64,000 nucleotides of DNA, taken from NCBI RefSeq assembly GCF_021028975.2, contig NC_059429.1:138446001-138510000 (forward strand), written 5' to 3'. Source of the DNA: Sphaerodactylus townsendi (Eukaryota). A program made the translations under genes and the position numbers. The notes under the pieces are model-generated. The model worked only from the letters and a program-made list of their open reading frames with translations, did not search any database and had not been told where the DNA came from. This document shows, one piece after another, positions 1 through 58,606 of this stretch. The first letter of the stretch is position 1. Every line of letters begins with the position of its first letter.

Positions 1-780
1 TGTCTTGAGGGTTCATTGGGAAAGATGCCCTGAAATCGTGATAGGAGGGCCTGAAAAGCAGGAAGGCCATCGAAGGAGCAGAGGAACGCAACAGCGTGGT
101 CTAACAGGAACGCAACAGCGTGCTCTAATGGCCAAACAAAAAAGAAGGCCCGGGGTGGGAACGTCCCGTCATTCTGCTCCTTTGGAGGCCTCCGCCAGCA
201 GAGTTGGCTACAGTGGCTTGACAGCGTCCCCCCCGGGTGGTGGTTGACAAAGGGCTGCCCAAAGGTTTGGGGGCTGGTGCAGGCGGGAAACCCAGGGAGC
301 CTTCCCACCCTCTTTATTCCACCCTCTTTAATGATCCGCAAGCTGCTCTCCGGCCCCGTAAGAGGCATCAGGTAATAACCAGGCCTGTCCCAGAGCAGTG
401 GGATCGAAAACACCAGGAAGCCTCTCTGGTCATGCAGGTGCTAACCCAGCAAAAAAACCCCTCACTGGCACGAATGCCAGCCTCTCTGCCATCTTCCCTG
501 TTGACATGAACGAGCTCTCCCCAGGATCCCAGCGCACCCTGAGCCTCTTCGATAACCCGCCAGCCGTGAGCCAGCCCAAAGAAAGCCTGTTCCAGCAAGA
601 GGGGTGCTGGGCGTAGCTCCAGCCAGAGTTTCTGGTTCTGGCACCCGGCCACCAAGCCCACCCTTTTGCCCACAGCACAGTCACACACCCCCCACCAAGT
701 CGCCGCCAAAAACACCTCCCCACCGTCGTTCAAGACGCCAGCCACGGCCACCCTTCAGCGAGTGCCCACTGGGGGCCTCC

Positions 781-3700
781 CTAGTTAGAACGGCCTTCCC
801 CACCACCATCCTCATCGTTGTCGTCCTCATCTTCATCATCGCCGTCTTCGTCACCACCGTCTTCGTCTTCGTCACTGCCATCTTCATCTTCTTCATCAAC
901 ATCTTCTTCATCGACATCTTCGTTTTCTTCATCGACATCTTCGTCTTCTTCATCGACATCTTCGTCATGATCATTATCGTTGCTGTTATCTTCATCTTCA
1001 TCCTCATCGTCATTGTCATTCTTGTCAGGAGAATCTACTATTTCCATTTCTGGCAAATTTGGGCTGAACACAGGGGCCAGGTCCGGGACAATTCCCACCT
1101 CTCGGCTGGGGTTCTTCCCAGGTCTCACTTGGGGTTTCTCTGCAGGTGCGGATTTTCCACCTGTGGCCTCGGCACGGGAGCGAGGTGAGGATTCACCCGA
1201 ATCTGTGCAGAAGAGAGAGGAACAGATCCCTGTAAGGCAGAGACAGTCACCCTCTCCTCCACCCACTGCATCCTGTCCCCTCGTGTGTCCGAGGAGCCTG
1301 CTGAGAGCAGTGAAGCCCACCACAGGCCTCTTGGATCCACGCCCATCTCGGCTTGACAAAGTCAGTGGGGATCAGGACCAGATTCCCTTAGGGCCGTGGT
1401 GGCGAACCTTTGGCACTCCAGGTGTTATGGACTACAATTCCCATCAGCCCCTGCCAGCATGGCCAATTGGCTATGCTGGCAAGGGCTGATGGGAATTGTA
1501 GTCCATAACATCTGGAGTCCCAAAGGTTCGCCACCACTGCCTTAGGGAATATCATTAATCTGTCCCTAAGTATGGGGACCTTCCAATTGGCCATGCCAGC
1601 AGGGGCTGATGGGAATTGTAGTCCATTGACATCTGAAGCTCCAGAATTGGACACCTCTGCTTTAGATCCTGCCAGCTTCCGCCCCAAATCCCAGCTCTTT
1701 TCTCTGGGAAAGCTAGTTGACAATGTGGCTACTAAACAACCCCTGATCTTTCTGGAGGACACTTCTACCCTGAATCCATTCTAATCTGGCTTTCTCTCTG
1801 GTCATCGGCTGGAGACAGCTCTGGTCACCCTGGTGGACGGTGTCCAGAGTCACCTGCGATGGGGGCGGGGGGCACTGTTGTTGCTTCTTGCTTTGACAGC
1901 CCCACTCGACCAGGGCATTTTGACCAGCCCCCTTGCGTGGGGATTTGTGGGTCAGCCTTGCAGTGGTGGTGCCCCTTCTCTGAGGTCGGGGACCGAAGGT
2001 TGCAATTGGTGAGAGAACTTCCACGCTCCAGCTGTTGGTTTGCGGAGTCCCACGGGGGCAATTCTCTCACCAATATTATTTAATATCTTTACGCCAGGCT
2101 GATCCAGAAGTTTGGGCTGATGACACCCAACTGTATGTGCTGATGAATGGTCATCCTGACTGTGCCCCAGATGTTCGGCCACTTGTCTGNNNNNNNNNNN
2201 NNNNNNNNNNNNNNNNNNNNNNNNNNNNNNNNNNNNNNNNNNNNNNNNNNNNNNNNNNNNNNNNNNNNNNNNNNNNNNNNNNNNNNNNNNNNNNNNNNNN
2301 NNNNNNNNNNNNNNNNNNNNNNNNNNNNNNNNNNNNNNNNNNNNNNNNNNNNNNNNNNNNNNNNNNNNNNNNNNNNNNNNNNNNNNNNNNNNNNNNNNNN
2401 NNNNNNNNNNNNNNNNNNNNNNNNNNNNNNNNNNNNNNNNNNNNNNNNNNNNNNNNNNNNNNNNNNNNNNNNNNNNNNNNNNNNNNNNNNNNNNNNNNNN
2501 NNNNNNNNNNNNNNNNNNNNNNNNNNNNNNNNNNNCCCCTTTCTCTCCTGCAGGAGACTCGAAGGGGCTGACAATCTCCTTGCCCTCCCCCCCTCACAAC
2601 AAACACTCTGTGAGGTAGGTGGGGCTGAGAGAGCTCCGAGAAGCTGTGACTAGCCCAAGGTCACCCAGCTGGCATGTGTGGGAGTGCCCAGGCTAATCTG
2701 AATTCCCCAGAAAAGCCTCCACAGCTCAGGCGGCAGAGCTGGGAATCAAACCCGGTTCCTCCAGATTAGAATGCACCTGCTCTTAACCTCCTACGCCACT
2801 GCTGCTCAATTGAAGCTAAAACTGGGGGACACGGAGGTTCTGTGGCTGGGACAGGGATGGGGGGGGAACAGAGGTGCCAACGGTAGACGCTGTTTAGTTG
2901 AATGCTGCGCCAATCATAAAGAGGTTAGGGATGCTCCTTGATGCCTCTTTATCAGTGAAGGTTCTAGTGCCTCACCTGGCCTTTTGCCACTCACTCTATG
3001 CCAGTGGTGGCGAACCTTTGGCACTCCAGCTGTTATGGACTACAATTCCCATCAGCCCCTGCCAGCATGGCCAATTGGCCATGCTGGCAGGGGCTGATGG
3101 GAATTGTAGTCCATAACAGCTGGAGTGCCAATGCTCTATACAGTGGTACCCTTTGGCCGGCTCCAGAAACTCCAGCCAGCGCAAAATGTGCCGGCATGGG
3201 TCCTTACAGGGACCCCCCGGGGAGTGTATATTCAACTCGTGTTTCACCAGCTGCGTTGGGTCCATGTGGAATACCGGATCAAGTTCAAGGTTTTGGGATT
3301 GACTTTTGAAGCCTTAAAAAGTCTGAGGCTGGTGTACCTATGCAACGGCCTTTTCCGGTATGTCCCTCAAAGATCATGACAATCAGTGAGTGAAAATCTG
3401 CTGGTGATCCCTGGCCCGAGAGAGGTCCAGCTAGCTGCAACCAGGGCCAGGGCCTTTTCAGTCCTGGCCCCCACCTTGTGGGTCGCTCTATCTGAGGAGA
3501 CTGGGGCCTGGAGGGATCTAATGCAATTCCATACAGCCTGTCAGACACAGCTGTTCCACCGAGCGAGCATATGGTTGAAGCACGCACCTATAGTATTTCC
3601 ATCACTGGGCTAAGAAATGGCAAATGCAGTTCAATGTAGCAAAATGTAAAGTGATGCACGTAGGGGCAAAAAATCCAAACTTCACATACACGCTACAGGG

Positions 3701-6700
3701 GTCAGTGCTATTAGTCACAGATCAGGAAAGGGATTTGGGCGTCTTAGTTGATAGTTCCATGGGAATGTCAACTCAATGAGTGGTGGCAGCTGTGAAAAAA
3801 GGCAGAAAACTCTATGCTGGGGATCATTAGGAAAAGGAGTTGATAATAAAACTGCAAGGATTGTCATTGCCCTTATATATAAAACGTGATGAATGCTGAC
3901 CACACTTGCCAGGTACTATGTGTTCAGTTCTGGCTCCACGCATCTCAAAAAAAAGGATATTGAAGAAGATAGAAAAAGAAAAAAGAGGTGCAGAGAAGAG
4001 GGCAACGAAAATGATTGAAGGATTGGAGCACCTTCCTTATGAGGAGGAGGCTGCAGCGTTTGGGACTCTTTAGTTTGGAGAGGAGTCGCCTGAGGGGAGG
4101 GATACATCGTGCCGAAGTTTCTCCATAAAATTATGCATGGGGTAGAAAATGTTGACAGAGAGAATTTTTCTCTCTTTCTCACAATCACTAGAACCAGGGG
4201 CATTCACATTAAAATGCTGGTGGGAATAAATTTAGGACTAAATAAAAGCGAATGCTCACTTCTTCATGCTTACAGCGTGTGATTGAGGTGTTTGGAATAT
4301 GCATGCCGCATGGGAGGGTGGTGATGGCAAATGCACCAATCTGGATAGCTCTTTGGGGTGCTGGGCTTCGGACAGATTTATGGAGGAGAAGTCGATCTCT
4401 CGGCTACCAACTGATCCTCCCTTGATCTCCGCGATCAGAGGTTGCAAAATGCTCTTAACTGTGCTCAGGTGATCTCGAGCAGCAGCAGCCTTGCTTAGAA
4501 GGCCATGGCGCCAATTCACTCCTGCATGTGAACTCCCTAAGGCACCTGGTGGGCCACTGCGAGTAGCAGAGAGCTGGACTAGATGGACTCTGGTCTGATC
4601 CAGCTGGCTTGTTCTTATGTTCTTATGAGATTGTGAGCCTCCTTGAGTCTCCTTACAGGAGAGAAAAGGTGGGGTATAAATTAATTCATTTGGTGGGCGG
4701 GAGAGAAACATATTGGCTGGTTTCCAGGACCTGAAGTGGGATCCTGAAAGTTTTATTTCTGTTGTCACCACCTTTAGAAAGTAGAATTAGTATGGTGGTG
4801 AAAATTTTAACGTTTTAAATTGCTTGCTCTACTTTATGGAATTTATACTGTATTTTTATTATGCTCATTAGCTGCCCTGTATTGTCTGGCTTCGGCTGGG
4901 AAAGGCTGGAGATAGCAAACCCTGAACCTACAGGGATCATTATATTTATTTATATCTCTGTCCTGGTGACCAGTTCCAGAGGTGGTTCAAGGTTTCCTGC
5001 GTTCTGTCAGCCTGGCCCTGATCCCTGAAAGTCTCCTCTTGTTTGGAAATGCACACTGACCTGCAAGATCCGTCTGCCCTCTCCAGACACCACCCAGGCA
5101 ACCCTGGGCCTCTAGTCCTCCTTCCAGACTCTGCCGTTTTGTTCTTGCTTTCTTAAAGCTTGATTCTGTTTCTTTCTCACTCTCTACAAGACTTATGATT
5201 AAAGTTATGCACTTCACAAGATTTCAGGGAGGAAAAGGGGGGACTGAAGGGAGAGCTGTTGGAAGTACAGTGCCTGGCCTACAAACCAATTGAGGAGAAA
5301 ACCCAGCGGGGAGTGGGCAAGAAGAAGAAGAAGAAGAAGAAGAGTTTGGATTTCTATCCCCCCTTTCTCTCCTGTAAGGAGACTCAAAGGGCTGACAATC
5401 TCCTCTTGCCCCTTCCCCCTCACAACAAACACCCTGTGAGGTGGGTGGGGAGACTGAGAGAGCTCCGAGAAGCTGGGACTAGCCCAAGGTCACCCAGCTG
5501 GCGTGTGTGGGAGTGCCCAGGTTAATGTGAAATCCCCAGATAAGCCTCCACAGCTCGAGCGGCAGAGCTGGGAATCAAACCCGGTTCCTCCAGATTAGAA
5601 ACATGAGCTCGTAACCTCCTATGCCACTGCTGCTCCAAGGAGTGGCCAGCTGGAGAGGGCAGCAAGGGCAGTGACCCCTACCCCCACCCCGTTCTTTTAT
5701 GTCGCGTCATGTCTGACCTTAGACTGATACTCTCAGGTTTGATTTCCTCATCCTTCTTGGAAGACGGGTGCTCCTTCTCTTCCAGAAAGAAGCCAGGTAG
5801 CTGCAGGTTATCTCTGCCCCTCCTCTTTCCTGTTTGAAACGCAGTTCCCTAATAAACATTTAACCTTATCTTTCATCAGCGAGTCTGCTGCCTCCCTGTG
5901 TCATTAGCTCTCTCTGCCAACAAGAGCGCCTGACCCTGGATTGGAACCTGGTTTTGCAGGTTCTTCTGTATCAGAGACACATACACGGGGACCCCTGTGG
6001 CTCTTCTGAGCATGTTCCCCAACATGGGTCGCACGCGGGGTCTGCCCGTGTTTCAGGAACGCATTAAGGCAAAGGCTGCCTGCACGGGTAGGCCTTTGGT
6101 GGCCTCAATGGGCAGAGTGGGCGATCGAGAAATGGCGCATGGGGCAAGACCCTCTGCACCCCACTTACCTTAGCTGGTGGCAGCCTGTTGGGGCTGGGCC
6201 TGGCAGGGCCGGGCTAAGGGGTGTGTGGTGGGCCTGTGGCCCAGCCTCACCAGGGTGCTCCTTCAACCAGCGGAGCCGCCACTGGCTGAAGGAGCAACCT
6301 GTCAGGCCATGCAGGCAATGAATGAGGGGGAAGGAGGAGGGGTGGGGTGATTTTCCACTCCCCCACGTGACTAAATGGCCGGCACCTGGGGACATTATTA
6401 TTNNNNNNNNNNNNNNNNNNNNNNNNNNNNNNNNNNNNNNNNNNNNNNNNNNNNNNNNNNNNNNNNNNNNNNNNNNNNNNNNNNNNNNNNNNNNNNNNNN
6501 NNNNNNNNNNNNNNNNNNNNNNNNNNNNNNNNNNNNNNNNNNNNNNNNNNNNNNNNNNNNNNNNNNNNNNNNNNNNNNNNNNNNNNNNNNNNNNNNNNNN
6601 NNNNNNNNNNNNNNNNNNNNNNNNNNNNNNNNNNNNNNNNNNNNNNNNNATTAATTAATATGCCGCCCCATCCCTGAAGGGCTCTGGGCTGATATGCAAC

Positions 6701-9700
6701 ACTCTGGCAAACCATAAAACCAAAGTCATAAATACAATTAAAAACAGCAGTTGCTTCCCTAGGAAAGGCATCTCACAAAACCCTCATTTAACTTTAACTC
6801 AACCCAATCCTCCAAGCATGAGGGGGACAGTGGGTTCCCGAAGGATAGCTGAGAACCCGCTGGAATGGGGGAGGAACATTCAGCCAGCTGGCCTCTCCAA
6901 AGGCCCGGTGGAACAACTCAGTCTTACAGGCCCTGCGGAAATTGCCAAGGTCCCTCAGGGCCCGGACAGCTGGAGGAAGAGTGTGACCCCACATGTCCCC
7001 GTGGTCGGTACGTCCCTGCTGACAGGCAATGCCCATCTTGAAACAGACAACTCCTGCCAGGGGACTGGGGGATCCGAGGTCCTTCCTCAGCTGCAGACCT
7101 CACGGCTGGTAAGTGTGGCTCTTTTTGTTGGTGGTAATTGTGAATGTTGCTCTCTGGGAACTGCAGAGGCAGTGTGGCCTAGTGGTGTAAGTCACTTTGA
7201 GTCCCCACTGGGGGAAAAGATGATGGGGAATAAGGAAAGCAAGCAAACAAACCAATCCCTGCTGTATGTGGTCCCAGTGAACTTTTCCTTTTTCGAATGA
7301 CGGGTTGGCTTGACTGGTTTTTGGGGCTGACGCATAACCCCACGGACTCATTCTTGGGAATCAGCCCCATTCAGAAGATTTAAGTTGGATTCTGAGTCGG
7401 CTTGCTTAGGACTGAAACCAGAGGTGGGATCCAGCAGGTTCTCACCAGTTCCCGAGAGTGGGTTACTAATTATTTGCTTGTGCCAAGAGGGGCTAATAAT
7501 TGGTCTGCTTTTCACGTTAGAAATTCCATTAGGTCCAAAAAAATCACAGAAAAGTCCTGTTGTTGTTTCCTATATGTCGGCTGGTTAGCTTAAGGTAGAA
7601 AAGCGGGATCATTCTCCCCTGCTGGGCTGTTTTAAAAAACATGTTTTAGAAATATGGTAAAGTTCCTTGTTTAGGAAGCAGTATCCTCCTTTGGATTTGT
7701 AAGAAACAACAAAATTAAGTATTTGAAAGTATTAAAGTATTTGACAGGCAGTCAATTAGAGGAGGAAGTAGTTGTTTCTGTAAGCAGTAGATACAATAGG
7801 ACTTTGCTGCTACAATGAGTTTGGGTAAATTATGGACAGAAAGATACCTCGTGCTGGAAATTGGGAACTTTTTTTTACAGTAAGAGTTTTTTACAGTAAC
7901 AGAGAAAGTATTAATGCCCACCCATCGAACAAATGCCGGCCACGCTCCCTTTAGTTCCAGCCCAGCTAATTGGCTTCTACGCCACTGTTTGAATCCCACC
8001 ACCATGGGAACCTGTTAGCTAAGAATTTTTGGATCCCACCTCCTCGTTACCAGCAGGAAAAAAATAGGAAAAATATTTTCCCTGAATGGCTCTGCCACCG
8101 AACTACCACTGGCTAAGGATCAAGAGCAAAGAAGACCAGTGTTGGGTCCAAAAGCCTCCACAAGTCCTAGAAAGAACATGTATATACACAAAATGTGCTA
8201 TTTCACATGGTTTCCTTCTTTGCCTTCTTTTCCCTTTTAAGGTTTAATGTAAGCCCCTCAGTGTTGGATTTATTATTTGCCAAATGTTTAGGATTATAAC
8301 TTTAGTTAGGTTCTTCAGTTAGTTTAAGGTTTGTTATTGTTAGATTCTAAGAAAGCCATGCCAATAAGTATCTGTAAAAGTCTTGCCCATAAGTATAAAG
8401 TACATGTGTTTATCCCTTACTAACGTTTCCCCTTAACGTTTAAGTTTAGAAAATGTTATTTTTTTGAAATTTGTGTGTCTGATGGCCAAAGCAGTGGCCA
8501 GAAAGGTTGATATTAAAGGGACAAGGAAACTAGTCCTGGAATTACAGTTTTGGACCAACACCCAGGTAATCCCATCTTCACCAACAAAAAGGACCTTTTG
8601 ACTAACAAAAAAAGGATGTCACCCTTGTTTCGCTATTGGACTGTTTGAAGTTTTACTCCTCAGGATCCAGAAGCTCATTGGACTATTGACGTTTCCAATT
8701 CTAGGATCTCAAGACCCATTGGACTATTGAAGTTTCCACTTCTAGGATCTCAAGATTCATTGGCAGCCTTTTCTTTTGGGACTTAATCCCATCAACAAAA
8801 ACAAAAGACTGTCTTCCTCCTCTTTGTTTTAAATTGTCTGTATTATGTGGCAGGGGACTGCCCCCTTCCTCCTCTGATCAGGTGAAAAACTGTATAAAAA
8901 GGGCTGTGTTTCGTTCTGTACTGGGCAGTCTGGCCTGGAAAGAGCTTGAAATCACAATAAAGAACCTCTGCTCTGAAGGCAGCCTGCCTCTGCATCCACT
9001 CACTGCTGCCAAAGCTGAAATCACTCTGAAATCACTATCGCTCATTGCTGACAAAGCTGAAATCACTCTGAAATCACTTTCTAGTTACCCCTGGCTGTGG
9101 GTAACACCACCACTGACTGAAACTGATATGAAAGTTCAACATGTTCCCGATAACAACCAGGAATAATTCTAGTGGCACAAACACTAATCCCAGGACTGAA
9201 ACCAAAATGGGCCTGCAGGGGATGGGACAGAAAGGGCTGGCTTGGGACTTCTAGGGGCCCTTCGAAGACTGTTTTATTTGGTTATGTTTACTCGCTGTCC
9301 TGAGTTGTGATTCACCATTTTGTTTCTAATGTGCTTCATGTATTTTATTCTACGTGTTTTATCTGTGTTTACAATCCACCGTGAGCTCCACCGGGAAGCA
9401 AAGCAGCTATTAAAGGAAGGAAGGAACCGGAGTTTCTTGCAGCTGAAAGAGGCTCTGTGAGAATCAGCTGCCCGTGTCAAAATAACAGAGGTCATTGCCC
9501 CAGGCGTGAGAAACCTCAAAAGTCACACGTGGACCAATTGTGGCACTGCCTTGCTTCTCTAGCTGCCTCTCCCCCTTCCCAGAGGTTGGCACACGCCTGG
9601 CACAGAGCTGCTGCCAGTGGGAGAGTCTCATAGTCTGTTCTGGCAAATGGCCGTGCCCGTGCCAATCAGCCGTTAATGAAACTGACTAATGGACCGTGAT

Positions 9701-11579
9701 CGCCCTTCGTCTGCCCCTTTGCTTAAGAGCAGGCCCATTGCTGTGTGGCCTGGACAGCGGAGGGAGGTCTTTCTGATCAGGGCCAAGAAGAATCTTGCTA
9801 GATCAGACCTGCGAGGGACCGCTTAGTGCAGCACCAGGTCTCTCTCTGTGGCCAACCAGTTATCTGTGGTGGCGAACCTGTGGCACTCCAGATGTTCATG
9901 GACTACAATTCCCAATCAGCCAATTGGCCATGCTGGCAGGGGCTGATGGGAATTGTAGTGCATGAACATCTGGAGTGCCACAGGTTCGCCACCAAGTTTC
10001 TGCAGCAGGGAATCAAGGCCTTCCCAGCCCTGGGAGGCAAAGGTTTGCTGCCTCTGAGCATGGAGGATCCTCTGAAGATGGCAGCCACAGATGCAGGTGA
10101 AACGTCAGGAGAGAATGCTGCTAGATTACAGGGGTAGGGAACCTGCGGCTCTCCAGATGTTCAGGAACTACAATTCCCATCAGCCCCTGCCAGCATGGGC
10201 AATTGGCCATGCTGATAGGGGCTGATGGGAATTGTAGTTCCTGAACATCTGGAGAGCCGCAGGTTCCCTACCCCTGTGCTAGAACATGGCCAGACAGCCC
10301 CAGGAAACCCCATTGACCCTTCAGGAGGCTCCCTTTGCTCACCCTGTTTACTCAGCCATTCAGGGACCTCTTCTCCGTGATCTGTCTGATCCCCTTTTAT
10401 CTGTTTGATTGCTAGCTAGTGCCCCCTTTCCCCATCAGTGGGCTTTTAACCCTCTCTCTGCCTGTGATAAGTTTTGCCTTGCACTCTCTTGTTTTGTGCA
10501 GCAGACACTTGAGGTTTCCTAAAAACGGGAAATGCAAGAGAGCATTTGTATGTGCCCCTTTGGGGCACTCAGCTCCTGGCCACAGGCCTCAAGGGCCGCC
10601 ACGCTCTGCCTAGGGATGGGGGGGGCCTCTTACGCTCTTGAGACTGCGGCTGACGGAGAGCCCAGCAACCTGAGGAGCCGGCTTCCCTTTCTGTCCTGGG
10701 CATGATGCTTCTCACTTGCATTCATTCCCAGTTTAATTTCCCAGGTGATTCTTGGCAGCAGCGGCATAGGAGATTAAGAGCTCATGTATCTAATCAGGAG
10801 GAACCAGGTTTGATTCCCCGCTCTGCCGCCTGAGCTGTGGAGGCTTGTCTGGGGAATTCAGATTAGCCTGTGCACTCCCACACACGCCAGCTGGGTGACC
10901 TTGGGCTAGTCACAGCTTCTCGGAGCTCTCTCAGCCCCATCCACCTCACAGGGTGTTTGTTGTGAGGGGGGAAGGGCAAGGAGATTGTCAGCCCCTTTGA
11001 GTCTCCTGCAGGAGAGAAAGGGGGGATATAAATCCAAACTCTTCTTCTTCTTCTCTGTGCAGGTAAAGGGGCACTGCTTGGCAATGTTTATTTCCTCTAC
11101 CCAAAGAGGCTCATCTTGCCCACAGCATCGAGGAATGGCCGTCTTCTCTATAGCTGCTTTTGCATGCAGATATTCTGCAGGTGAAGCATGCCGAGAGGAG
11201 AACAGCCTGTTGCGTTTCTGCCTGCTGTAGAATGAGCGTGACCAGCTCCACCAGACGGTCTTCTCGGGGCAGAAGCGGAGCTGCGCGGGCACCTCTGACC
11301 TCCCGTTCCTGCCCCTCTTCCCCCCTCCCGCTCCAGATCTGGGCCCTGGCAAGAGCTGCCCCTCTCATCCCCTCCTCCTCCTCCTCAGGAGACCCCATCT
11401 GCGCCCTGCCGTTAAGGACAAACACCTTCCTCTCTGCCTGGCGGGGCTGGTGCCGGCCCTGCTTCCCGACCCACCAGAGCCCCGTCCAGATCCTGCCTCT
11501 CCTCACCTTTGGCTGGGGCAGCCAGCAGCTCGGCCCAGAGGGCAGACGACACCAGGACGAGGAAGAGGCACTTCTTCAT
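781..11579 (-). CDS. Putative multi-exon secreted protein with WFDC/Kunitz-type signal peptide and Asp/Glu-rich region (uncharacterised; model partly tentative)
   Basis: Exon 1 11579-11507 encodes MKKCLFLVLVSSALWAELLAAPAK+G|gtgagg, with GCCGCCATG Kozak context. Downstream AG/GT-bounded phase-1 exons: 10518-10343 (needs +1 nt), 9749-9687, 7160-7104, 6298-6251 (or to 6169), ~5965-5690 (frameshifted), 5183-5061 (SEKETESSFKKARTKRQSLEGG...) and 1202-804 (or to TAG at 781; acidic tract). Minus-strand AATAAA at 313-318. The syntenic position matches the WFDC cluster next to DNTTIP1. Confidence 0.6.
808..1026 (-). repeat. Coding-type acidic low-complexity tract (GAT/GAC/GAA codons; imperfect 21-nt DVDEEDE units)
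   Basis: Translates to DKNDNDDEDEDEDNSNDNDHDEDVDEEDEDVDEENEDVDEEDVDEEDEDGSDEDEDGGDEDGDDEDEDDNDED. Third-position variation keeps D/E, unlike a pure microsatellite. Confidence 0.85.
1393..1539. mobile_element. Palindromic hAT-type MITE (~147 bp)
   Basis: Near-perfect hairpin centred on GGCCAATTGG, flanked by a CCTTAGG-containing duplication. Related copies at ~3002-3130, 9864-9993, 10129-10276, 15337-15429, 25459-25604, 31793-31900, 40160-40417, 48957-49104, 56131-56268, 60930-61000, 61618-61750 and 61938-62044. Confidence 0.85.
2190..2535. other. Assembly gap (N run); further gaps at 6403-6649 and 19634-19804
   Basis: Runs of N. Confidence 1.
2536..2808 (-). mobile_element. tRNA-derived squamate SINE (Squam3/CORE-like family)
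   Basis: Shared body (..gggctagtcacagcttctcggagctctctcagccccacc..) and tail ggggatataaatccaaac(tct)n. Further copies at ~5321-5636(-), 10757-11053(+), 19068-19363(-), 23180-23531(+), 31097-31397(+), 39358-39582(+), 41140-41436(-), 42135-42430(+), 52842-53067(+), 53060-53310(-), 53670-53860(+), 53862-54150(-), 55602-55868(+), 59830-59935(-) and 60064-60360(-). Confidence 0.85.
3590..4627 (+). mobile_element. CR1 LINE 3' fragment
   Basis: WQMQFNV.KCKVMH, ERDLGVLVD and [13 protein letters not shown]-like remnants; 3' tail (gttcttat)n. Confidence 0.85.
7419..9115. mobile_element. Non-autonomous hAT element carrying a nested solo LTR
   Basis: Termini CAGAGGTGGG.../...CCACCACTG with 8-bp TSD ACTGAAAC (7411-7418, 9116-9123). 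Confidence 0.8.
8045..9106 (+). mobile_element. Solo ERV-like LTR inserted in the right TIR of the hAT element
   Basis: Begins (c)GTTACC and ends GGTAACA; TATAAAA at ~8893; AATAAA at ~8955; short internal tandem repeats; CCACC on both sides. Confidence 0.7.
10066..10310 (+). mobile_element. Penelope-like pLTR fragment with minimal hammerhead ribozyme motif, split by a MITE
   Basis: TCCT-CTGAAGA(10072-10078)-stem II-GAAAC-GTC-AGGA; the element resumes after the MITE (10129-10276). Confidence 0.7.
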
Positions 11580-12080
11580 GGCGGCGGCAGTGCTGGGAAC
11601 AGGCTCCGAGTGACCAGGAGGGCTGAGACCCACCAGGCTATAAACCCGTGGCTGGGAGGAACCCGCCTGGGAGTGGAGGAAATGCTCTGCACGTTGATTG
11701 ACAGGGAGCTCCAATAAAGTCAGCTTTCCTGGCCTGCGTGTGCCGCCCACCACTCACCTGGAGGGCTGGATCCAGCCAAGCACAATGCGAAGCCCTTGCA
11801 AAGACACCTTCCGCCGTGTTGACATTGGCAGTGATCTTTGTGTGGGCTCTAGAAGTGTGGTGTTGGCGCTGGCAGTGGAGAAGCCTGACCTCACCTCTGG
11901 AACGGATTCCTTCAAGTGTTGGCCAGCTGGGCCATTGGGAAGGGGGGGGGGCCCACAAGGCCCTCAAGTACCAACTGCGGTTTGTTTGCACATCCCTAAG
12001 GGGAGATGTTGCCAGCTCCCGAACTGGATCCTCCCAGTACCAAGATACCCAAAGTCAGACGGGGGTGATTCTTGCAGTGA

Positions 12081-18272: not shown

Positions 18273-21099
18273 CATAGCAGTATGTGAATTTCACACCTGA
18301 GAAAAACTCTTCTCTAATCTGGGCTAAGATGAGCAGCCCTTTAGGACAGTGGCCATTTCTCTGATATAGTGTTAGATAGTTCCAAACGAGCTTGCCGTTT
18401 TCCAGTGTGTGTCTGGCTTTGATGCATCTTCAGCGGGTCGGGGTATATTCAGTGTTCATCAAAGTTCCAAACAGGAAACATTTTCATAGTTCATCCTGGA
18501 CTGCATTCTCTCTCAGGCACCTTCCGCACAGCAAATATAGAATGGGTTGCAGGGCATGGAATAAAGCGTGGAACCTGGAAGGCCTCCTTTGCCTCCGTAA
18601 AACCCCACCACCTGAGGCTGTTGCTCAAGTAAACCTGCTGGCTACTCCCAGTAGTATTTTCCACACACCAGCGAAGTGTGTCCAAAGGGAGACTTCCTGC
18701 TTGTGGGAGTTTTGGCCTCCTCGGGAACCTCAGGGAAGGCTCCAGACACCTGCCAGATAAGCAGGAGACGCCTCTTTACCCCCACAGAGCTCTTGACCTG
18801 ACTCCAACTGCCTGAGGTCCCCCCAAGTGGACTGACACATAAACCTGTTTTGCCAGTTTCAGAGCAGTAAGAGAGCAGACGTGCCTCTTAAGGGAAAGTT
18901 TTGGAAACACGGCTGAGTGAGCGGAAGGGTGGGGGGAGCAGAGTGTTCCACGAAGAAATGCCCAGAGAGGGCTCACCCTGGAATGGCTGTCTCCAAGAGG
19001 GAGCCAGAGGGAAAGCCTCTTGTCTGAGAAAGGCCGCTGGGCGGGGTGCCTTGCAGCGGGGAGCATTGAGGAAGAAGAAAGATTATATCCCCCCCTTTCT
19101 CGTCTGTAAGGAGACTCAAGGTGGCTTACAATCTCCTTTCCCTTCCCACCCCGCACAACAAAAACCCTATGAGGTGAGTGGGGCTGAGAGAGCTGCTCCA
19201 AAGAACTGTGACTAGCCCAAGGTCACTCAGCCTGGCATGTGTTGGAGTGCACAAGCTAATCTAGTTCCCCAGATAAGCCTCCACAGCTCAAGTGGCAGGG
19301 CGGGGAATCAAACCCTGTTCTCCAGATTAGAGTGCACCTGCTCTTAACCACTACACCAAGCTGCCCCTCCTCCCTGACCTGGCTGTGGTTCCTTATCACC
19401 TCAGTGCCGTGAGTGACTAAACCTGAAGCCCCATTAGGGTAATTGCTGCCTCAACCAGGGTGCAACACGCCCAGCCATTGCAGCAGCAAGCCTGGGTTTC
19501 GCCACAAGCTGTTCCAGACAAATCTTGTGGCTGCCCAGCTTTACGGAGACGTTTTCCCTCACTCCGGATTATGTGGAAATACCGATGCCTTGACTCACCT
19601 AAAGGTCCAAAGCCTGCTCCAAAGAGGGTGGAGNNNNNNNNNNNNNNNNNNNNNNNNNNNNNNNNNNNNNNNNNNNNNNNNNNNNNNNNNNNNNNNNNNN
19701 NNNNNNNNNNNNNNNNNNNNNNNNNNNNNNNNNNNNNNNNNNNNNNNNNNNNNNNNNNNNNNNNNNNNNNNNNNNNNNNNNNNNNNNNNNNNNNNNNNNN
19801 NNNNAGCCGGGATTCAAAAAGGAAGCCGCCTCCTTTGACTGACACACTCCCTAAAGTTGACAGATGAAAAGGGGGGTGTTCACAAACAAGTAACGCCCAT
19901 TTGCAGCTGCGAGCGCCCTTTCGCCATCGGACGCATGAGCTTAGTCAAGAGCCTGGAGCAACATGAAGCCACCGTGCAGTGAATGGACCCAACGCACGTG
20001 CAACAAGTCCCCTCACACATCTCCAAGCAGACATAAGCAGAATTTGGCAAGTGGGGAGGGAGCTCAACTCCCCCTCCTCTCAGAAACCCCCCCCCCCCAA
20101 CAATCTCCCTTCTTATTTAGCCCAGCAGCGAGCTGAGTGTTGGAGCAACTGACATACATACTGTGCATAACGCTTGCATACATAAAGAGAGCTTCTCTGA
20201 CACTGCTGGGCTTAGAGCAGCATCCATGGTGGGCTGCTACATGTGTTGACCTTTGACTTCCAGATCCGGAAGAGGCCTGGCATGCGTCAAATAGAGTAAA
20301 TAGATGCCAGTTCCAACAGGCTTTGAATGACAACTAAGAGCCATGTTGGCATACCTGAGAGAGTCACTGATGCCAAGCCCCGCCAGTGTCATACCAGAGC
20401 CACAGCAGAACTACTGGGCAGCCTTACCGGGCAAGGGGGGAGCATGTTGTCAGTAGAGAACATAAGAACGAGCTAGCTGGATCAGGACTTCAGAGTCCAT
20501 CTAGTCCAGCGCCTTTCCTTCTGCTACTTCGCAGTAGGCTATCTTCACCAGATGTCTTTGGGAGCTCACCTGCAGGATGTGAAAGCAATGACCTGCTGCT
20601 GCTGCTGCTGCTCCTGAGCACCTGGACTGTTAAAGCATTTGCAATCTCAAATCAAGGGAGGTGATCAAGATTATAGCCATAACTCCGACTTCTCCTCCAT
20701 ACTCCATCAATCTGTCCAAGCCCCTTTTAAAGCTCTCCAGGTGAGTGACCATCACCCCCTCCTGTGGCAGCATATTCCAAACACCAATCATGCATTTAGC
20801 GTTGAAGAAGTCATTTCCTTTTATGAGTCCTAATTCTTCCCCCCAGCACTTTCAATGAATGCCCCCTGGGTCTAGAGCAGAACATCTCTATTGACTTCAT
20901 TTGTGGGGACCCAAAGCGGACGACCACATTCTCCTCTTCTCCCTTTTATCCCCCTAACAACCCTGTGAGGTAGGCTAGGTCGGGAGGATGCGATTGGCCC
21001 CAGTGGAGGGCCGCTTTGGGGCCCAGAAGGTGTTTTCCTCCTCGCAGCCACAGCGGGATCTGAGAGGCACAGAGCACGTGGGGGCGAGGAAGGCAGCTG

Positions 21100-21729
21100 T
21101 ATCAACGCCCCGCGAGTGGAAGGAGCCTCCAGGTCTCTCCTCTCCAGCTCCAGAGCACGAGCGGCCATCAGAACCAAACTCCCGGCTCAGAGGCTCCCGT
21201 GCGGGCGCTGCCTGGGAGGGCCTGCTGCTCACCCCACGCCCCACTGGAGCGTTGCTCGGGGTCCCCTCTCCCCGGGGTCGGGGGGGGCAGAGCGGGCTGC
21301 TTGGCCAAGGCACAGTGTGGTCCCCTAGCCCCCTCCTTAGCGCTGTGCCAGGTCCAGGCGGGAGGTGTCCCGCGGGTCCCTCTGCAGGTGGGAGGTCGGG
21401 GCTGGACCCACCCCCTGCCAGAGCCTGGAGGCGCCCCCGGACGCCCCCCCGGGGACGCCTCGCCTGCAGCAGCCAATCGGTGCAGTAAGGGGGCGGGGTG
21501 AAAACCTTATTTTATCCAATGAATTGATCTAATAAACAATCCGGGCTCACAGCAACAGAGCGATCTGCGGGGAGAGGGGAAAGAACTCAGACCCGCCCCC
21601 CACCCCACGGCGCCTGCGCAGAGAGGCCGCCTGTCCGTTGCTAAGGCGACACGCGCCGATTCTGGGCGCACGCCGATGACGTGAGAGAGAGGCGCCGGCA
21701 GGAGCAGGAGCGGCGGCGCCGGAAGAAGG
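21100..21729 (+). promoter_or_regulatory. DNTTIP1 CpG-island promoter
   Basis: CpG-rich; CCAAT ~21473, GC box ~21490 and TGACGT ~21677 upstream of ATG 21730. Confidence 0.7.
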
Positions 21730-24700
21730 ATGGGGGCAGCCCGGGAGGTTGAGCCGCAGCAGCCGCCGCCGGAGGGAGGAGGGGAGGCGGTCGAGCGGAC
21801 GGACGGCGGGAGCGCCCCGGGAGCAGCGGTGGGTGGCGGGACCCGCAGCGCCCCCTCCCTCCCCTCCCCTCCCTGCCCCCCCCGAGGGTCCCTCTGACGC
21901 CCCTCCCGCTCCTCTCCCCGCAGAGCCCCCCCTGGAACATCATGATCAAACACCGGCTGGTGCAGCGGCGAGGGCGGCGCTCCCAGGTGATGAGCAGGTG
22001 AGCCGGGGGGGGGGGGAGGAACGCAGCCCTTTCACCACCAGCACCCCCCCCACGGCACCGGCCCTCCCCAAAGCGCCCCCATCGGGAGGGCGCCCCCCCC
22101 ACACTGAGCACCTCCTTTCCCCACCCTCGAGCCCTCTAAAGGGGCGCCCAGCAGACTCCCGCCTCTCCTGCCCCCCCCAACTCCCTCCGACCACTCCCCC
22201 CGCCGACCACTCTGCTCCAGCAGGGCCTTCTGGTGCCCCCGGACTGTTCAATTACGAGGCTCTGTGTTCAAATGATGCCTTTATTATGAAACAGCATCAG
22301 GAGCAAGCATGGAGACTTCTATGGCCAGAACTAAGGCAGAAGCAGCAAATCGGTCTCCATTTCACCCCCTCTTCCCTGACTCCCAGTGCCCAAAGGGAGG
22401 GGGGGGGGTTGGCACCCCACCAGTCCTGCAGTCCAGCCTTCCCCTGAGGTCGAAACAACCTGCCTGCCACACCACTGACTGGCAACTCAGCCACAGAGCT
22501 CCAGAAGCAAAAGCTGGAAGGGTGAGAAAGGACATCCTGGCACTGTAATTACATGGGTGGGGGGGACAAGGAGAGGAAAGTTCCCACATCCCAGGCAGGA
22601 GATGTGGCGTGGCAGGGTCACAGCACACCTGGGCTGATCATGACAGGTCCCTCCAAGTGGACCAGTAGTGACTCCCTCTTCCCGCCCCCCTTACTTCACT
22701 TCCCTAGTTCTGGCTGCCTTTGCGAGCGGCTGTTCCGAACTGGGCTCTGTGTTGCTTGCTTTTGGACTTTTTCTGATCCTTTTGCAGTATGTCCCTCATG
22801 CCTGCCGGCCTGTGCTGTGCAAGTATCAGACCTTGTTCCCCTTCTAAAGATGAGCCGAGCCCTGCTGGATTGGACCCATCTGGCCCCTGCTGCTGGCAGC
22901 TGCATGAGGCCACTGGTTGGACTAAATTATTATTATTGGTAGTAGTATTTATTATTTATACTTCATAGACCACTCAACCCCCGGAGGGCTCTGAGCAGTG
23001 TACAGGGCCCATAAACAAGACTGATAAAACAATAGATATAAATAATAAATAATATTATTTATTTAAATAAATGTAAAAATAATGATAATGTATTGAATTT
23101 GTTATACCACCCGCCCACCCCCAGTCTGACCCAGCAGGGCTGTCCTCCTTATGTTCCTGCGTGCTTATGTTCCCGCGGAGCAGCAGTGGCGTAGTGGCTA
23201 AGAGCAGTGGCTAAGAGCAGGTGCACTCTGATCTGGAGGAACCGGGTTTGATTCCCAGCTCTGCCACTTTTGAGGCTGTGGAGAGCTTTATCTGGGAATT
23301 CAGATTAGCCTTTCGTGCACTCCCACCCTGCACGCCAGCTGGGTGACCTTGGAGGTCTAGTCACAGCTTCTTCAGAGCTCCTCTCAGCCCCACCCAACCT
23401 CACAGGGTGTTTGTTGGCGAGGTGAAGGGAGCAAGGAGATTGTCAGCCCCTTTGAGTCTCCTGCAGGAGAGAAAGGGGGGATATAAATCCAAACTCTTCT
23501 CCTCCTCCTCCTCCTCCTCTTCTTCTTCTTCTTTCATGCAGCCACCAAGACTGCAGGGCTTCCTTTGATCCCAGCTGACAGACCAGCGTCAGTTTCCATT
23601 AGCTCTCCTGATGCGCAAGAGATTCACAATAACCAATCTGTATTTCGCTTGTTCTTCAACCGTGTATCTTTACGGCGTCTCTAGGCTGATGCTTGTGGCA
23701 TAATCCATTCCACCCCCACCACTCCAAAATGGTGCCTGCCTTTTGCCTTTTGCCTTGCCATCTTTTTCATTTTGTGGCAGAAGCTCCTCCTGCCTCGAGG
23801 GTAGAGTCAGCTCGGATTTGACTTCTCCAGCCAACACTCTGTGTCCTCAAAGGACAGACTCCCTTGCATCAGTCGGGCTGGAGCCACCAGACAATGGACT
23901 TGTGGCTGTGTGGAGGGGTTCTGTCACTTGAATATTTGGTCTTTGCCCCTGGAATGAGCCCTATGAAGAGGAGCGATGCTCTAGAACAGGGGTAGGGAAC
24001 CTGTAACACTCAAAGAGCCATTTGGACCCGTTTTCCACGGGAAAAGAAAACACTTGGAGCCGCAAATAATTTTTGACATTTTAAAAAATAAAAGACTAGC
24101 ACTATATATATATATAGGGTTTTTTAACCTTTTATTCCGGCTCATTTCACCTGGAGAAGCAAGCATGGATGCGCTTCGGCCCTGCCACCTGGCAGAGCAT
24201 GAACCAAGGATGAAGCCGCGGCTCGCCTTTGCCGTCACGCCTTGAAATATGCCCGCCTGTCTCAGCGGGGTGGGCGAGAGGGGAAGCCTCGGCAAAGGCG
24301 TGGCCCCAGCCAACCATTGGGCAGATAGCAGGCAACACCCTGCTACACCTGCAGAATGCGGGCAACTGGGAGATGGGGCTGGCGGCTCAGCTCGTGGAGC
24401 CACAGTGCAAGGAACTTGGCAAGAAGAGCCGATAAGTACTCTCGGTTTCCGCAGGCCTGAGTTCCCCACCCTGCTCTAGAAATTAGACCATCCCATTTCT
24501 CCCAGGAAACTGGGTGGGAAAATAGCTAGATTGAAGTCCAGCAGCACCTTAGAAACCAACAAGATTTTCTTTTTTTCCCCCAATTGTTATAAATTTTATT
24601 ATTTTCCTATAATACAATAATAGCAAAGAAAGTAATAATCATGACCGGTTACAATCTTCCATAATAAACAAATTATCAGTAAAGGATTTCACAAGGAAAA

Positions 24701-56839: not shown

Positions 56840-58606
56840 ATGGCGTCACGCATCCTGCATCGCCTGCGGCACGCGCTGACTAGGGAGGGCGAGCAGGAGG
56901 GCCTCCCTGCCTGCGGCTCTGAAGCGGAAGAGTTCCCGGAGAGTTCCGAGCTGGAGGACGACACGGAGGGTCTCTCCACACGCCTCAGCGGGACGCTGAG
57001 CTTCACCAGCAACGAGGAGGAGGAGGCGGAAGGAGGCCCTGGCGGGACCATGCAGGACTTGGCGGAGGCCTTGGGTCCAGGACTGCTGAGCGAGGCCTCG
57101 GAGGACGGAGGTGCGAGTCTGGAGAGGGAGGTGGGAAAAGTGTGGCTGGACAGGTGCTCCCACACAGCAGCCAACAGCCAGAAACTGGGGGAGGGGCTGC
57201 CTGAAGGTGGGGGCCGCTGGTTGGCAACACCCAATGGCTTCTGCCAGGCAGCGGGCATCCAGGGGGCAGACGGAGTAGCGCAGAAGGCACTGCTGTGACC
57301 TCCTCCTGGCGGCTCCCTCTTTTGCCCCCCTCCCTTTCGTTGCAGAGCCTGGGCCCCCCTTGGCCGAGCACCAGGGCAGCAACATGCTCACCCGGCAGCT
57401 GCAGGAGCTCTGGCGGAAATCGCGGGGCAGCCTCGTGCCCCAGCGCCTCCTCTTCGAGGTGACCAGCACCAACGTGGTCAACGAGCGCAGCTCCAAGTAC
57501 GTGGTGAGTGAGGCGGGGGTCCCTGGCTGGGGAGGGGCCCTTAGCAGCAGGGTTGCCCCAAGGGGGAGAGCCCGGAGACCAGGAGGGAGGGAGGGGGACG
57601 CTTTGTTTCTCCCCCGAGGACAGTCCGCTGCTCTGGGAAGGAGTCGAAGGCCCATCTGCAGCTTGGACAGGAGAAGGGGCTGGTGGGGTCAGTGCCCCCC
57701 CTCTCCCCTCCCCAGGGCCTCTTTCCACATGGGGGTGGGCTTTGGAGGGTCCTGGCCCTGACTCTTGTCTTCTTTCTCCCTGCTGCAACTGGGCACGGCT
57801 GGCTCAGAAGAGCCTCAGGTAACCGGCTGGCACTGAGCTCTGCTTTGCCTGCTTTGGGAGGGTGGGTGCTGGTAGCTGATGGGGAGGGGGTCGCTTCTAG
57901 GTGCCCCCCTTCACCCTTCCTCTCCTGCCCACAGCTCTACACCATCTACTTGATCCGGGCAGGGCAGTTCGACAAGGCCCCCGCCACCATCGCCCGGCGC
58001 TACTCGGACTTTGAGCGGCTGAACCGGCACCTGCGCCGCCGCTTTGGCAGCGACATGGCTGCCGTCTCTTTCCCGCGGAAGCGGCTGCGGCGCAACTTCA
58101 CGGCCGAGACGATCGCCAAGCGCAGCCGGGCCTTCGAGCAGTTCCTCTCCCACCTGCACTCCCTGCCGGAGGTGCGCCGCTCCCCCGAGTTCCTGGAGTT
58201 CTTCTTCCTGGACGACCTGCAGGCGGCGCAGCGCTCGACGTGCACGGGCACGTACTGCGAGGCCCTGGCCGGGTGGACCAACGCCCACCGGCTCCAGGAC
58301 AAGCTGGGCGCCTCCCGCTCCGGCCACTTCCTGCTGACGCTGGCGGGGCTGGCCGTCTGCCACCAGGAGCTGGGCCAGTTGGCCGAAGCCCACGCCTACA
58401 GCGAGCAGGCCCTGCGGCTCCTGGGGGCCCAGGACAGCCACCCGCTGCTGGCCCCCTTCCTACTGACCCACGTCCACCTGGCCTGGATGCTGGGCAAGGA
58501 CAAGCGGCAGGCGGAAGCCCGGCTGCAAGGCCTCCAGGACACCGGGCTGGCCGGGCCGCAGCCCCCCTCCCTGAAGGAGCTCCTCATCAAGCACCCGCTG
58601 CCCTGA
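56840..58606 (+). CDS. SNX21: Sorting nexin 21 (PX domain and TPR-like C-terminus)
   Basis: Exons 56840-57110, 57346-57503, 57935-58606. MASRILHRLRHAL, PQRLLFEVTS, RRYSDFERL, FPRKRLRRNFTAETIA. AATAAA at 59136. Confidence 0.97.

What the first reader, a model, noticed from the sequence alone, without database searches (positions are those of the whole stretch)
781..11579. Uncharacterised secreted acidic precursor at the WFDC-cluster position: WFDC-type signal exon fused to non-WAP exons
Seen: an exon encoding MKKCLFLVLVSSALWAELLAAPAK ends in a phase-1 GTGAG donor. It is followed on the same strand by a chain of AG/GT-bounded exons whose lengths keep phase 1 (63, 57, 48, 123 and 399 nt; 176 nt needing one extra C), ending in a ~73-aa D/E tract. 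No WAP four-disulfide core or Kunitz Cys pattern appears in the window. Known: LWAEL-type signal peptides occur in squamate Kunitz/WAP proteins, and the mammalian WFDC locus next to DNTTIP1 produced rapidly evolving non-WAP secreted proteins (semenogelin/SVS REST genes) that reuse the signal exon. Inference: an independent, lineage-specific WFDC-derived secreted protein, possibly a seminal protein or a Ca2+-binding matrix protein.
Basis: partly seen in the sequence, partly recalled or inferred. Interest (0 to 1): 0.8.

Follow-up and report, generated by a model that had tools for sequence, protein, structure and literature searches.

The report
Candidate two-exon secreted polyacidic protein gene

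Summary
Both ends of the finding are real sequence features. Exon 1 (11579-11507, minus strand) encodes a 24-residue signal-type peptide and ends in a strong phase-1 donor. The exon at 1202-781 has the best non-repeat acceptor in 12 kb, is phase 1, and encodes 139 residues (63 Asp/Glu, no Cys, charge about -54) up to a TAG. The middle of the finding does not hold. The intron contains 693 AG/GT-bounded, open, phase-1-preserving segments, against about 500 in shuffles. Both assembly gaps lie in the intron of the two-exon model. Neighbours are confirmed as DNTTIP1, UBE2C, SNX21 and ACOT8. No WAP or Kunitz cysteine pattern occurs in any frame. The exon-2 product has no Pfam family and no homologue in a word search or in a full phmmer scan of 1.84 billion representatives. 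It is predicted to be disordered. The layout (24-aa signal exon, phase-1 exon 2 carrying the whole product) matches the published plan of WFDC/SPINT/semenogelin-locus genes, but sequence homology of exon 1 could not be tested. The runs found are genomic, and one patchy run of unknown type covers only 699-1170. WAP exons left of the window cannot be excluded. Verdict: plausible lineage-specific gene, unproven.

The parts
11638..11644 (-). TATA-like box TTTATAG, about 60 nt upstream of the ATG; predicted promoter, with no CpG island
   Evidence: Read directly from the sequence. Its promoter role is inferred.
11507..11579 (-). Exon 1 coding part: ATG in the context gccgccgccATGa, a 24-residue signal-type peptide (n-region MKK, hydrophobic core CLFLVLVSSALW, c-region AELLAAPA), plus 1 base. 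Phase-1 donor AAG|gtgagg.
   Evidence: The donor ranks 4 of 525 GT sites in 12 kb. It is one of only 3 signal-peptide-like ATG ORFs on both strands of the 64-kb window, and the only clean one. SignalP was not available.
1203..11506 (-). Predicted single intron of 10.3 kb. It is full of high-copy SINE-like and inverted-repeat elements and holds both assembly gaps (2190-2535, 6403-6649).
   Evidence: Word depth reaches 1e5 to 2e7 at 1201-1800, 2401-3200, 3601-4800 and 5201-5800 in genomic runs. Repeats within the window are mapped. The 693 chance 'exons' are.
10343..10518 (-). It has decent splice sites but an in-frame TAG after 34 codons when entered from exon 1. At most an alternative or poison exon.
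781..1202 (-). Exon 2 coding part. Phase-1 acceptor (17 of 20 pyrimidines upstream, CAG|A); the junction codon G|AT is Asp; 139 further codons, then TAG at 783-781. Residues 1-62 are Pro/Ser/Gly/Ala-rich and residues 63-139 are a D/E/N/G tract.
   Evidence: The acceptor ranks 3 of 916 AG sites, and the two above it lie in repeats. Genomic contigs run straight across 1202, so the sequence there is sound.
804..1013 (-). Degenerate in-frame tandem repeat (periods 6, 21, 36 and 57 nt; units such as DEDVDEE) that makes up the acidic tract.
   Evidence: Tandem Repeats Finder. Codons are GAT 21, GAA 19, GAC 10, GAG 3.
313..332 (-). Two poly(A) signals, ATTAAA at 332-327 and AATAAA at 318-313. They predict a 3'UTR of about 470 nt and a two-exon gene without a third non-coding exon.
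   Evidence: Read from the sequence. No strong donor lies between the stop codon and these signals. Their use is not shown.

Best explanation
A small, TATA-driven, two-exon gene on the minus strand.

Exon 1 (11579-11507) supplies a cleavable signal peptide of about 23-24 residues. After a 10.3-kb repeat-filled intron, exon 2 (1202-781 plus about 470 nt of 3'UTR) supplies the whole secreted product. That product is about 140 residues, has no cysteine, and is intrinsically disordered. It has a Pro/Ser/Gly-rich N-terminal third with S-x-E sites, followed by a 77-residue Asp/Glu/Asn tract that arose by in-frame expansion of a GAW-type minisatellite.

The plan is the one described for genes of the WFDC/SPINT/semenogelin (REST) locus, in which a conserved signal exon is joined in phase 1 to a freely evolving product exon. 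The gene sits where that locus ends in mammals, beside DNTTIP1. I therefore read it as a lineage-specific, REST-like derivative in which a polyacidic exon stands in place of a WAP or Kunitz exon.

Shown: the sequence features, their phase match, their splice-site rank, the synteny, the absence of relatives and the predicted disorder. Inferred: that the two exons are spliced together, that the protein is made and secreted, and that it acts as a soluble polyanion binding Ca2+ or other cations, mineral surfaces or basic proteins in a secretion.
For: - Exon 1 has a Kozak-like ATG, a signal-type peptide and a GTGAGG donor in phase 1. The donor ranks 4 of 525.
- Only 3 signal-like ATG ORFs occur in 128 kb of both strands.
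- The acceptor at 1202 is the best non-repeat acceptor in 12 kb (rank 3 of 916). It opens exactly the frame that runs 139 codons to TAG.
- Only 2 of 36 strong acceptors on this strand of the whole window have a phase-1 ORF of 100 codons or more.
- Poly(A) signals lie downstream and a TATA-like box lies upstream.
- The neighbours are DNTTIP1, UBE2C, SNX21 and ACOT8.
- The gene plan matches PMC3209443: a signal peptide of 24 residues, a second exon that is always phase 1, and two-exon variants such as SPINT3 and WFDC10A/B.
- The product is acidic (pI 4.05, charge -54, 63 D+E of 139) and is predicted unstructured (pLDDT 60, pTM 0.12, no secondary structure).
- The one SNP seen in the exon (1171) falls on a third codon position, GCC to GCT, and is synonymous (plus the frame).
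- A run of unknown type (X4, 215 Mb of contigs) holds 699-1170 at depth 6. It shows 0 on unique intron stretches 4801-5200 and 5801-6000, and 0.7-1.4 on three other unique stretches (1801-2200 and 3201-3400). This would fit RNA.
Against: - There is no RNA evidence. No listed run is on record as RNA, and X1-X3 are genomic, with contigs crossing the acceptor.
- X4's type is unknown. It also shows depth 0 on the predicted distal 3'UTR (1-600).
- There is no homologue of either exon product anywhere, so no conservation supports coding.
- Long ORFs are common in this GC-rich window (184 of 90 aa or more). A GAW repeat is open in several frames on both strands, for example 681-1019 on the minus strand and 604-1188 on the plus strand.
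- A phase-matched strong acceptor with a long ORF within 11 kb is expected by chance at roughly 0.1-0.3.
- The codons of the tract are A/T-ending in a GC-rich region, as expected of a young repeat rather than a selected coding sequence.
- WAP or Kunitz exons could lie left of the window or in the two gaps.
Confidence: 0.45

Rival explanations
1. Exon 1 is the ordinary first exon of a WAP/Kunitz-type gene (a WFDC3-position orthologue) whose domain exons lie left of the window or inside an assembly gap. The acidic ORF is then an unrelated, non-coding minisatellite with a fortuitous acceptor, or at most a rarely used alternative terminal exon.
For: The position and orientation relative to DNTTIP1 are those of a WFDC-locus gene (the human order is from my own knowledge and PMC3209443). 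The window ends only 780 nt beyond the acidic exon. Two gaps of about 250-350 nt could each hide a domain exon of about 140 nt. The acidic tract is a degenerate tandem repeat that is open in several frames and has no homologues.
Against: No WAP or Kunitz cysteine pattern occurs in any frame of the 64 kb. The 1202 acceptor is the best non-repeat acceptor downstream of exon 1, it is phase-matched, and it is followed by 62 non-repeat open codons, a stop and poly(A) signals. The gap flanks look like SINE and simple repeat, not exon.
Confidence: 0.25
2. Nothing functional. The signal-like ORF and the acidic ORF are a decayed remnant of a WFDC-locus gene, or chance ORFs in GC-rich DNA, and are neither spliced together nor translated.
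For: There are no relatives, no RNA on record and no annotated protein with these sequences in the collections. Chance ORFs are abundant. The repeat-derived tract uses A/T-ending codons.
Against: Several independent signals coincide: a TATA-like box, a Kozak-like ATG, a textbook n/h/c signal peptide, a top-ranked donor, a top-ranked acceptor in the matching phase, a stop codon and a poly(A) signal. The tract has kept one codon register over 77 codons.
Confidence: 0.22
3. One reading: a precursor of seven or more exons, in which exon 1 is followed by exons of 176, 63, 57, 48 and 123 nt before the acidic exon.
For: The segments exist, lie in sequence that is unique within the window, and keep phase 1. 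The 176-nt segment has fair splice sites.
Against: There are 693 equivalent segments in the interval, against about 500 in shuffles. The 9687 donor ranks 157 of 525 and the 5183 acceptor ranks 98 of 916. The 176-nt exon has an in-frame TAG and the wrong length for phase. X4 shows depth 0 over 4801-5200, which contains the 123-nt exon, while covering the last exon (weak, because the run type is unknown).
Confidence: 0.04

Closest known systems
REST genes of the mammalian WFDC/semenogelin locus (SEMG1/2, rodent SVS genes), as described by Lundwall and colleagues (PMC3209443, PMC7556508)
   Same: A signal peptide on its own first exon with only the first residue(s) of the mature protein. A phase-1 acceptor of exon 2. 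One exon carries the whole, non-WAP, repeat-expanded, fast-evolving secreted product. The chromosomal neighbourhood is the WFDC locus, beside DNTTIP1.
   Different: No third, non-coding exon is seen. The product is polyacidic and lacks the Gln/Lys-rich transglutaminase-substrate repeats (one Gln, four Lys). Nucleotide homology of exon 1 to other locus members, on which the family was defined, could not be tested. The lineage is a gecko, so any relation would be an independent, parallel derivation.
SPINT3, WFDC10A and WFDC10B (two-exon members of the same locus; PMC3209443)
   Same: The two-exon form: a signal exon of about 24 residues, then a phase-1 exon with the product, the stop codon and the 3'UTR.
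   Different: Those encode a Kunitz or WAP disulfide core. This product has no cysteine at all.
Squamate Kunitz, waprin and Ku-WAP-fusin precursors
   Same: A 24-residue signal peptide (PMC11126030). By recollection only, many carry ...LWAEL... near its end, as here (ALWAELLA).
   Different: The start is MKKC, not MSSGG followed by a Leu block. There is no Kunitz or WAP domain. The resemblance is five residues and was not tested with any tool.
Polyacidic secreted or luminal cation-binding proteins (osteopontin poly-Asp, bone sialoprotein poly-Glu, the calsequestrin and chromogranin acidic tails, mollusc Aspein/Asprich). This is functional analogy only, from general knowledge.
   Same: A signal peptide, intrinsic disorder, long Asp/Glu runs and S-x-E sites that could be phosphorylated in the secretory pathway.
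   Different: There is no sequence relation. The gene is not in the SCPP/SIBLING cluster and uses a phase-1 rather than a phase-0 intron. No mineral or Ca2+ link was shown.

Membership tests
WFDC/SPINT/semenogelin (REST) locus gene family | Lies in the WFDC locus (in human its telomeric end abuts DNTTIP1) | tested here: inconclusive
   DNTTIP1_dimer, UQ_con (UBE2C), PX+TPR (SNX21) and Acyl_CoA_thio (ACOT8) lie to the right in the mammalian order. The gene is on the strand opposite to DNTTIP1. No WFDC gene is visible in the window, and the sequence to the left is not available.
WFDC/SPINT/semenogelin (REST) locus gene family | First exon encodes the signal peptide and only the very first residue(s) of the secreted protein | tested here: met
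   24 codons plus 1 base, with n/h/c regions and A-P-A before the last codon. The plan is quoted from PMC3209443. The cleavage site was not computed.
WFDC/SPINT/semenogelin (REST) locus gene family | Acceptor of exon 2 is phase 1, and exon 2 carries the rest of the protein | tested here: met
   Donor 11507 and acceptor 1202 are both phase 1, followed by 139 codons and TAG in one exon. This is predicted from DNA only.
WFDC/SPINT/semenogelin (REST) locus gene family | Nucleotide conservation of exon 1 (and of exon 3, if present) with other members | not testable with these tools
   No other member from this or a related genome could be fetched. A protein word search seeded on exon 1 gave no hit at E <= 10, which has low power for 24 residues.
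WFDC/SPINT/semenogelin (REST) locus gene family | Third exon with 3' non-translated sequence only | tested here: not met
   No good donor lies between the stop (781) and the poly(A) signals at 332-313. Two-exon members are known (SPINT3, WFDC10A/B), so this does not exclude membership.
WAP four-disulfide core proteins | Eight-cysteine WAP domain | tested here: not met
   The exon-2 product has zero Cys. No eight-Cys WAP pattern occurs in six frames of 64 kb. Pfam gave no hit.
Kunitz/BPTI inhibitors | Six-cysteine Kunitz domain | tested here: not met
   No Kunitz spacing or F.Y.GC motif in any frame. Pfam was blank.
SCPP/SIBLING acidic mineral-binding proteins | SCPP cluster location, phase-0 introns throughout, S-x-E phosphorylation motifs | tested here: not met
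   The locus is the DNTTIP1/UBE2C neighbourhood and the intron is phase 1. S-x-[ED] sites are present at residues 1, 32, 57, 73 and 109 of the exon-2 product. No sequence match was found.

The most novel reading that the evidence does not exclude
A gecko lineage has independently done what mammals did with semenogelin and the SVS genes. It kept a WFDC-locus promoter and signal exon and replaced the protease-inhibitor exon with a newly expanded repeat, here a poly-Asp/Glu tract. The result is an orphan secreted polyanion used in a reproductive or calcium-handling secretion such as semen, shell gland or endolymphatic sac.
Probability: 0.2. Interest if true: 0.65.

Novelty: new variant of a known kind. 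Interest (0 to 1): 0.35.

Why it matters
If the two exons are spliced and translated, this would be a non-mammalian example of the exon-swap evolution known from the mammalian WFDC/semenogelin locus: a conserved signal exon joined to a freely replaced product exon. It would also be a clean case of a protein tract born from an in-frame minisatellite. It would give gecko biology a candidate secreted polyanion to test in semen, eggshell or endolymphatic calcium stores. If it is not expressed, it is a caution. In GC-rich, repeat-rich reptile DNA, chains of phase-keeping AG/GT 'exons' arise by the hundred, and a GAW repeat gives long ORFs for free.

Tried and rejected
- **Family and atlas scans.** Pfam on the exon-2 product, on the longer ORF 781-1359 and on the exon-1 ORF gave nothing. 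The ESM Atlas gave no usable hit.
- **Homology searches.** A word-based search on residues 1-62 of the exon-2 product found no candidate. A full phmmer scan of 1.84 billion representatives gave 0 hits at E <= 0.001. A word search seeded on exon 1 (region 59-98 of the ORF 11415-11753) gave 6 candidates, none at E <= 10. Exact look-ups of five ORF versions found none in the collection.
- **RNA evidence.** No run is on record as RNA. X1-X3 proved to be genomic, and X4 is ambiguous.
- **Literature.** Searches for the LWAEL leader motif found only an author name or nothing. Searches for squamate WFDC synteny and for gecko eggshell acidic proteins gave nothing specific. Two eggshell reviews did not mention OCX-25, WAP or Kunitz, so I make no claim about it.
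- I left the third word-based protein search unused, because no query available from the window could reach full-length DNTTIP1 or WFDC proteins within the tool's length limits.
Full report
**What is in the sequence.** The feature lies on the minus strand.

- At 11579-11507 an ATG in the context gccgccgccATGa opens 24 codons, MKKCLFLVLVSSALWAELLAAPAK, plus one base. GTGAGG follows directly.
- The peptide has the three regions of a signal peptide: MKK, a 12-residue hydrophobic core, and a small-residue end A-P-A.
- A TATA-like TTTATAG sits at 11644-11638.
- At 1202 a pyrimidine-rich acceptor (ttcctctctcttctgcacag|AT) opens, in phase 1, 139 codons up to TAG at 783-781. The junction codon would be G|AT, Asp.
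- ATTAAA (332-327) and AATAAA (318-313) follow.

**The exon-2 product.**

- It has 35 Asp, 28 Glu, 13 Gly, 11 Ser, 10 Pro, 10 Asn and no Cys. Its pI is 4.05 and its net charge is about -54.
- Residues 1-62 are Pro/Ser/Gly/Ala-rich. Residues 63-139 are the acidic tract.
- At the DNA level the tract is a degenerate tandem repeat with periods of 6, 21, 36 and 57 nt. It is built mostly from GAT, GAA and GAC.
- S-x-[ED] sites occur at residues 1, 32, 57, 73 and 109. There is no N-glycosylation sequon.
- AlphaFold2 on this exon's product alone gives pLDDT 60, pTM 0.12 and no secondary structure, as expected for a disordered chain.

**The assembly gaps.** Gaps 2190-2535 and 6403-6649 touch none of the proposed exons.

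- In the two-exon model both are intronic, so continuity of frame across them does not arise.
- The right flank of the first gap is the head of a SINE-like element present 14 times in the window. It has word depths of 1e6 to 2e7 in genomic runs.
- The second gap is flanked by attaattaat and aataataat.
- I infer that both are repeat-caused breaks. I did not look up their letters, and a short exon hidden there cannot be excluded.

**The intermediate exons.** I listed every AG...GT segment of 30-400 nt between 11506 and 1203 that is open in phase 1 and keeps phase 1.

- There are 693 of them. Mononucleotide shuffles of the same interval give 502 +/- 67.
- I scored splice sites with a rough vertebrate matrix whose frequencies I supplied from general knowledge, so ranks are indicative only. 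The 9687 donor ranks 157 of 525 and the 5183 acceptor ranks 98 of 916.
- The 176-nt segment 10518-10343 has fair sites (ranks 8 and 10). Entered from exon 1 it reads 34 codons and then TAG, and its length does not keep phase.
- The chain is therefore not more than chance.
- In contrast, the exon-1 donor ranks 4 of 525. The 1202 acceptor ranks 3 of 916, and the two higher acceptors (11005, 3789) lie inside high-copy repeats.

**How unlikely the two-exon pairing is.**

- A crude scan for ATG ORFs with a basic n-region and an uncharged hydrophobic core finds three in both strands of the 64 kb. One is a poly-Ile run and one sits mid-intron without further signals. The ORF at 11579 is the clean one.
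- Of 36 strong acceptors (at least 17 of 20 pyrimidines, YAG) on the minus strand of the whole window, two open a phase-1 ORF of 100 codons or more, and 1202 is one of them.
- That puts the chance of a phase-matched long ORF behind a strong acceptor within 11 kb at roughly 0.1-0.3. This is suggestive, not decisive.
- The window has 184 ORFs of 90 aa or more. The GAW repeat is open in a second minus-strand frame and on the plus strand as well.
- The stronger point is that several independent signals coincide: TATA-like box, Kozak context, signal peptide, top donor, top acceptor, 62 open non-repeat codons, stop and poly(A) signals.

**Neighbourhood.** Pfam places four neighbours:

| Pfam match | Coordinates and strand | Gene |
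|---|---|---|
| DNTTIP1_dimer | 25094-25456 (+) | DNTTIP1 |
| UQ_con | 35657-36058 (+) | UBE2C |
| PX plus TPR | 57683-58606 (+) | SNX21 |
| Acyl-CoA thioesterase | 59152-59658 (-) | ACOT8 |

- This is the mammalian order. From my own knowledge, in human WFDC3, the last gene of the WFDC locus, lies head-to-head with DNTTIP1.
- PMC3209443 places SPINT5 and WFDC3 at that end of the locus.
- No WAP or Kunitz cysteine pattern occurs in any frame of the window.

**Relatives.** None were found.

- Pfam is blank.
- The word search on residues 1-62 finds no candidate.
- phmmer against 1.84 billion representatives gives 0 hits at E <= 0.001.
- The Atlas gives nothing.
- The exon-1-seeded search gives nothing at E <= 10.
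- None of five ORF versions is in the 15-billion-protein collection.
- Power is limited for a 62-residue low-complexity piece and a 24-residue leader. Orthologues below about 50% identity, or unannotated ones, would be missed.
- I did not search or fold the joined precursor. The exons were handled apart, by reference.

**Expression.** No run on record as RNA holds the stretch.

- X1-X3 are genomic runs of the same organism. Their contigs cross the acceptor (520-1410 and 1-1389) and cover unique intron parts at the same depth as the exon.
- They confirm the assembly at the last exon. They also show one SNP in it, at 1171, which falls on the third position of the tenth codon (GCC to GCT) and is synonymous.
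- X4 is a different sample with 215 Mb of contigs.
  - It holds only 699-1170, at depth 6.4.
  - It shows depth 0 on the unique stretches 4801-5200 and 5801-6000, and 0.7-1.4 on 1801-2200 and 3201-3400.
  - It shows depth 0 on 1-600.
- Such patchiness does not fit uniform shotgun DNA and would fit RNA or a reduced-representation library. The library type is not on record, and the missing distal 3'UTR does not fit the poly(A) signals I propose.
- I count this as a hint only.

**Comparison with what is known.** PMC3209443 states the plan of the semen-coagulum, WFDC and SPINT genes of the locus.

- Exon 2 carries the rest of the protein.
- Exon 3 carries only 3' non-translated sequence.
- The acceptor of exon 2 is always phase 1.
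- The signal peptides are 24 residues long.
- Two-exon variants exist (SPINT3, WFDC10A/B).
- Homology rests on exon 1 and exon 3 while exon 2 evolves freely.

The gecko candidate meets the layout features. It fails the WAP and Kunitz domain tests. The feature that defines descent, nucleotide similarity of exon 1 to other members, could not be tested. PMC11126030 confirms only the 24-residue length and the MSSGG start of those leaders, which this one lacks.

**Verdict.**

| Reading | Confidence |
|---|---|
| Two-exon, REST-like gene for a secreted, disordered polyanion, specific to this lineage | 0.45 |
| Exon 1 belongs to an ordinary WAP/Kunitz gene whose domain exons lie outside the window | 0.25 |
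| Non-functional remnant or chance | 0.22 |

The function is inferred from composition alone: binding of cations, mineral or basic proteins in a secretion. The finding is worth one RNA-seq mapping and a look at the adjacent sequence. Until then it is a moderately interesting, unproven orphan.

Noticed in passing
window 10343-10518 (-): A 176-nt segment with a good acceptor (tttcccgtttttag|G) and donor (AGG|gtgagc). If spliced after exon 1 it would add 34 residues of a basic, two-Cys peptide and then stop. It could be a poison exon or a short alternative product.
   Followed up: partly
window 11758 and 11895 (-), acceptor 11666 (-): Two of the strongest donor-like sites of the 12 kb (CAG|gtgagt and GAG|gtgagg) lie just upstream of exon 1, with a fair acceptor at 11666. 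There may be a 5' non-coding exon and a small 5'UTR intron, which would move the promoter upstream of the TATA-like box.
   Followed up: no
window 1392-1549, 2994-3131, 9862-9994, 10073-10283: Copies of a roughly 140-nt palindromic element (…ggcactccagatgtt…actacaattcccatcagcccc…ggggctgatgggaattgtagt…) with 13-20 copies in the window and word depths up to 6e6 in genomic runs. This is a very abundant inverted-repeat (MITE-like) element of this genome.
   Followed up: partly
window 2536-2809, 5319-5635, 10752-11063: A SINE-like family (14 copies in the window, word depth up to 2e7) whose head is preceded by (GAA)n/(CTT)n. One copy abuts the gap at 2190-2535, which probably explains that gap. Its internal ...ctctcctgcag|GAG scores as the best 'acceptor' in the region, making it a ready source of false exons.
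   Followed up: partly
window 801-1000: Genomic run X1 shows summed word depth of about 400 here, against 55-70 on the flanks (X2: 101 against 46). A few other loci in the genome therefore carry near-identical GAT/GAA repeat words. Whether they are paralogous acidic exons is unknown.
   Followed up: no
window 454-457 and 1171: Differences between individuals. Four adjacent A>C changes at 454-457 in X2, in the predicted 3'UTR. G>A at 1171 in X2, which is synonymous in the proposed frame.
   Followed up: partly
window 26449-26739 (-) and 36618-37300 (+): ORFs with …[13 protein letters not shown]…FKV…[21 protein letters not shown]…, which by recollection resemble the C-terminal end of CR1/L2-type LINE ORF2. 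These would be retroelement fragments inside DNTTIP1 and UBE2C introns.
   Followed up: no
window about 21800-22000 (+), and 20000-22500: The first coding exon of DNTTIP1 appears to lie near 21.9 kb in a CpG-rich stretch (GC 0.60), about 10 kb from exon 1 of the candidate gene. Unlike human WFDC3/DNTTIP1, the two therefore do not share a bidirectional promoter. A further assembly gap lies near 19.6 kb.
   Followed up: no
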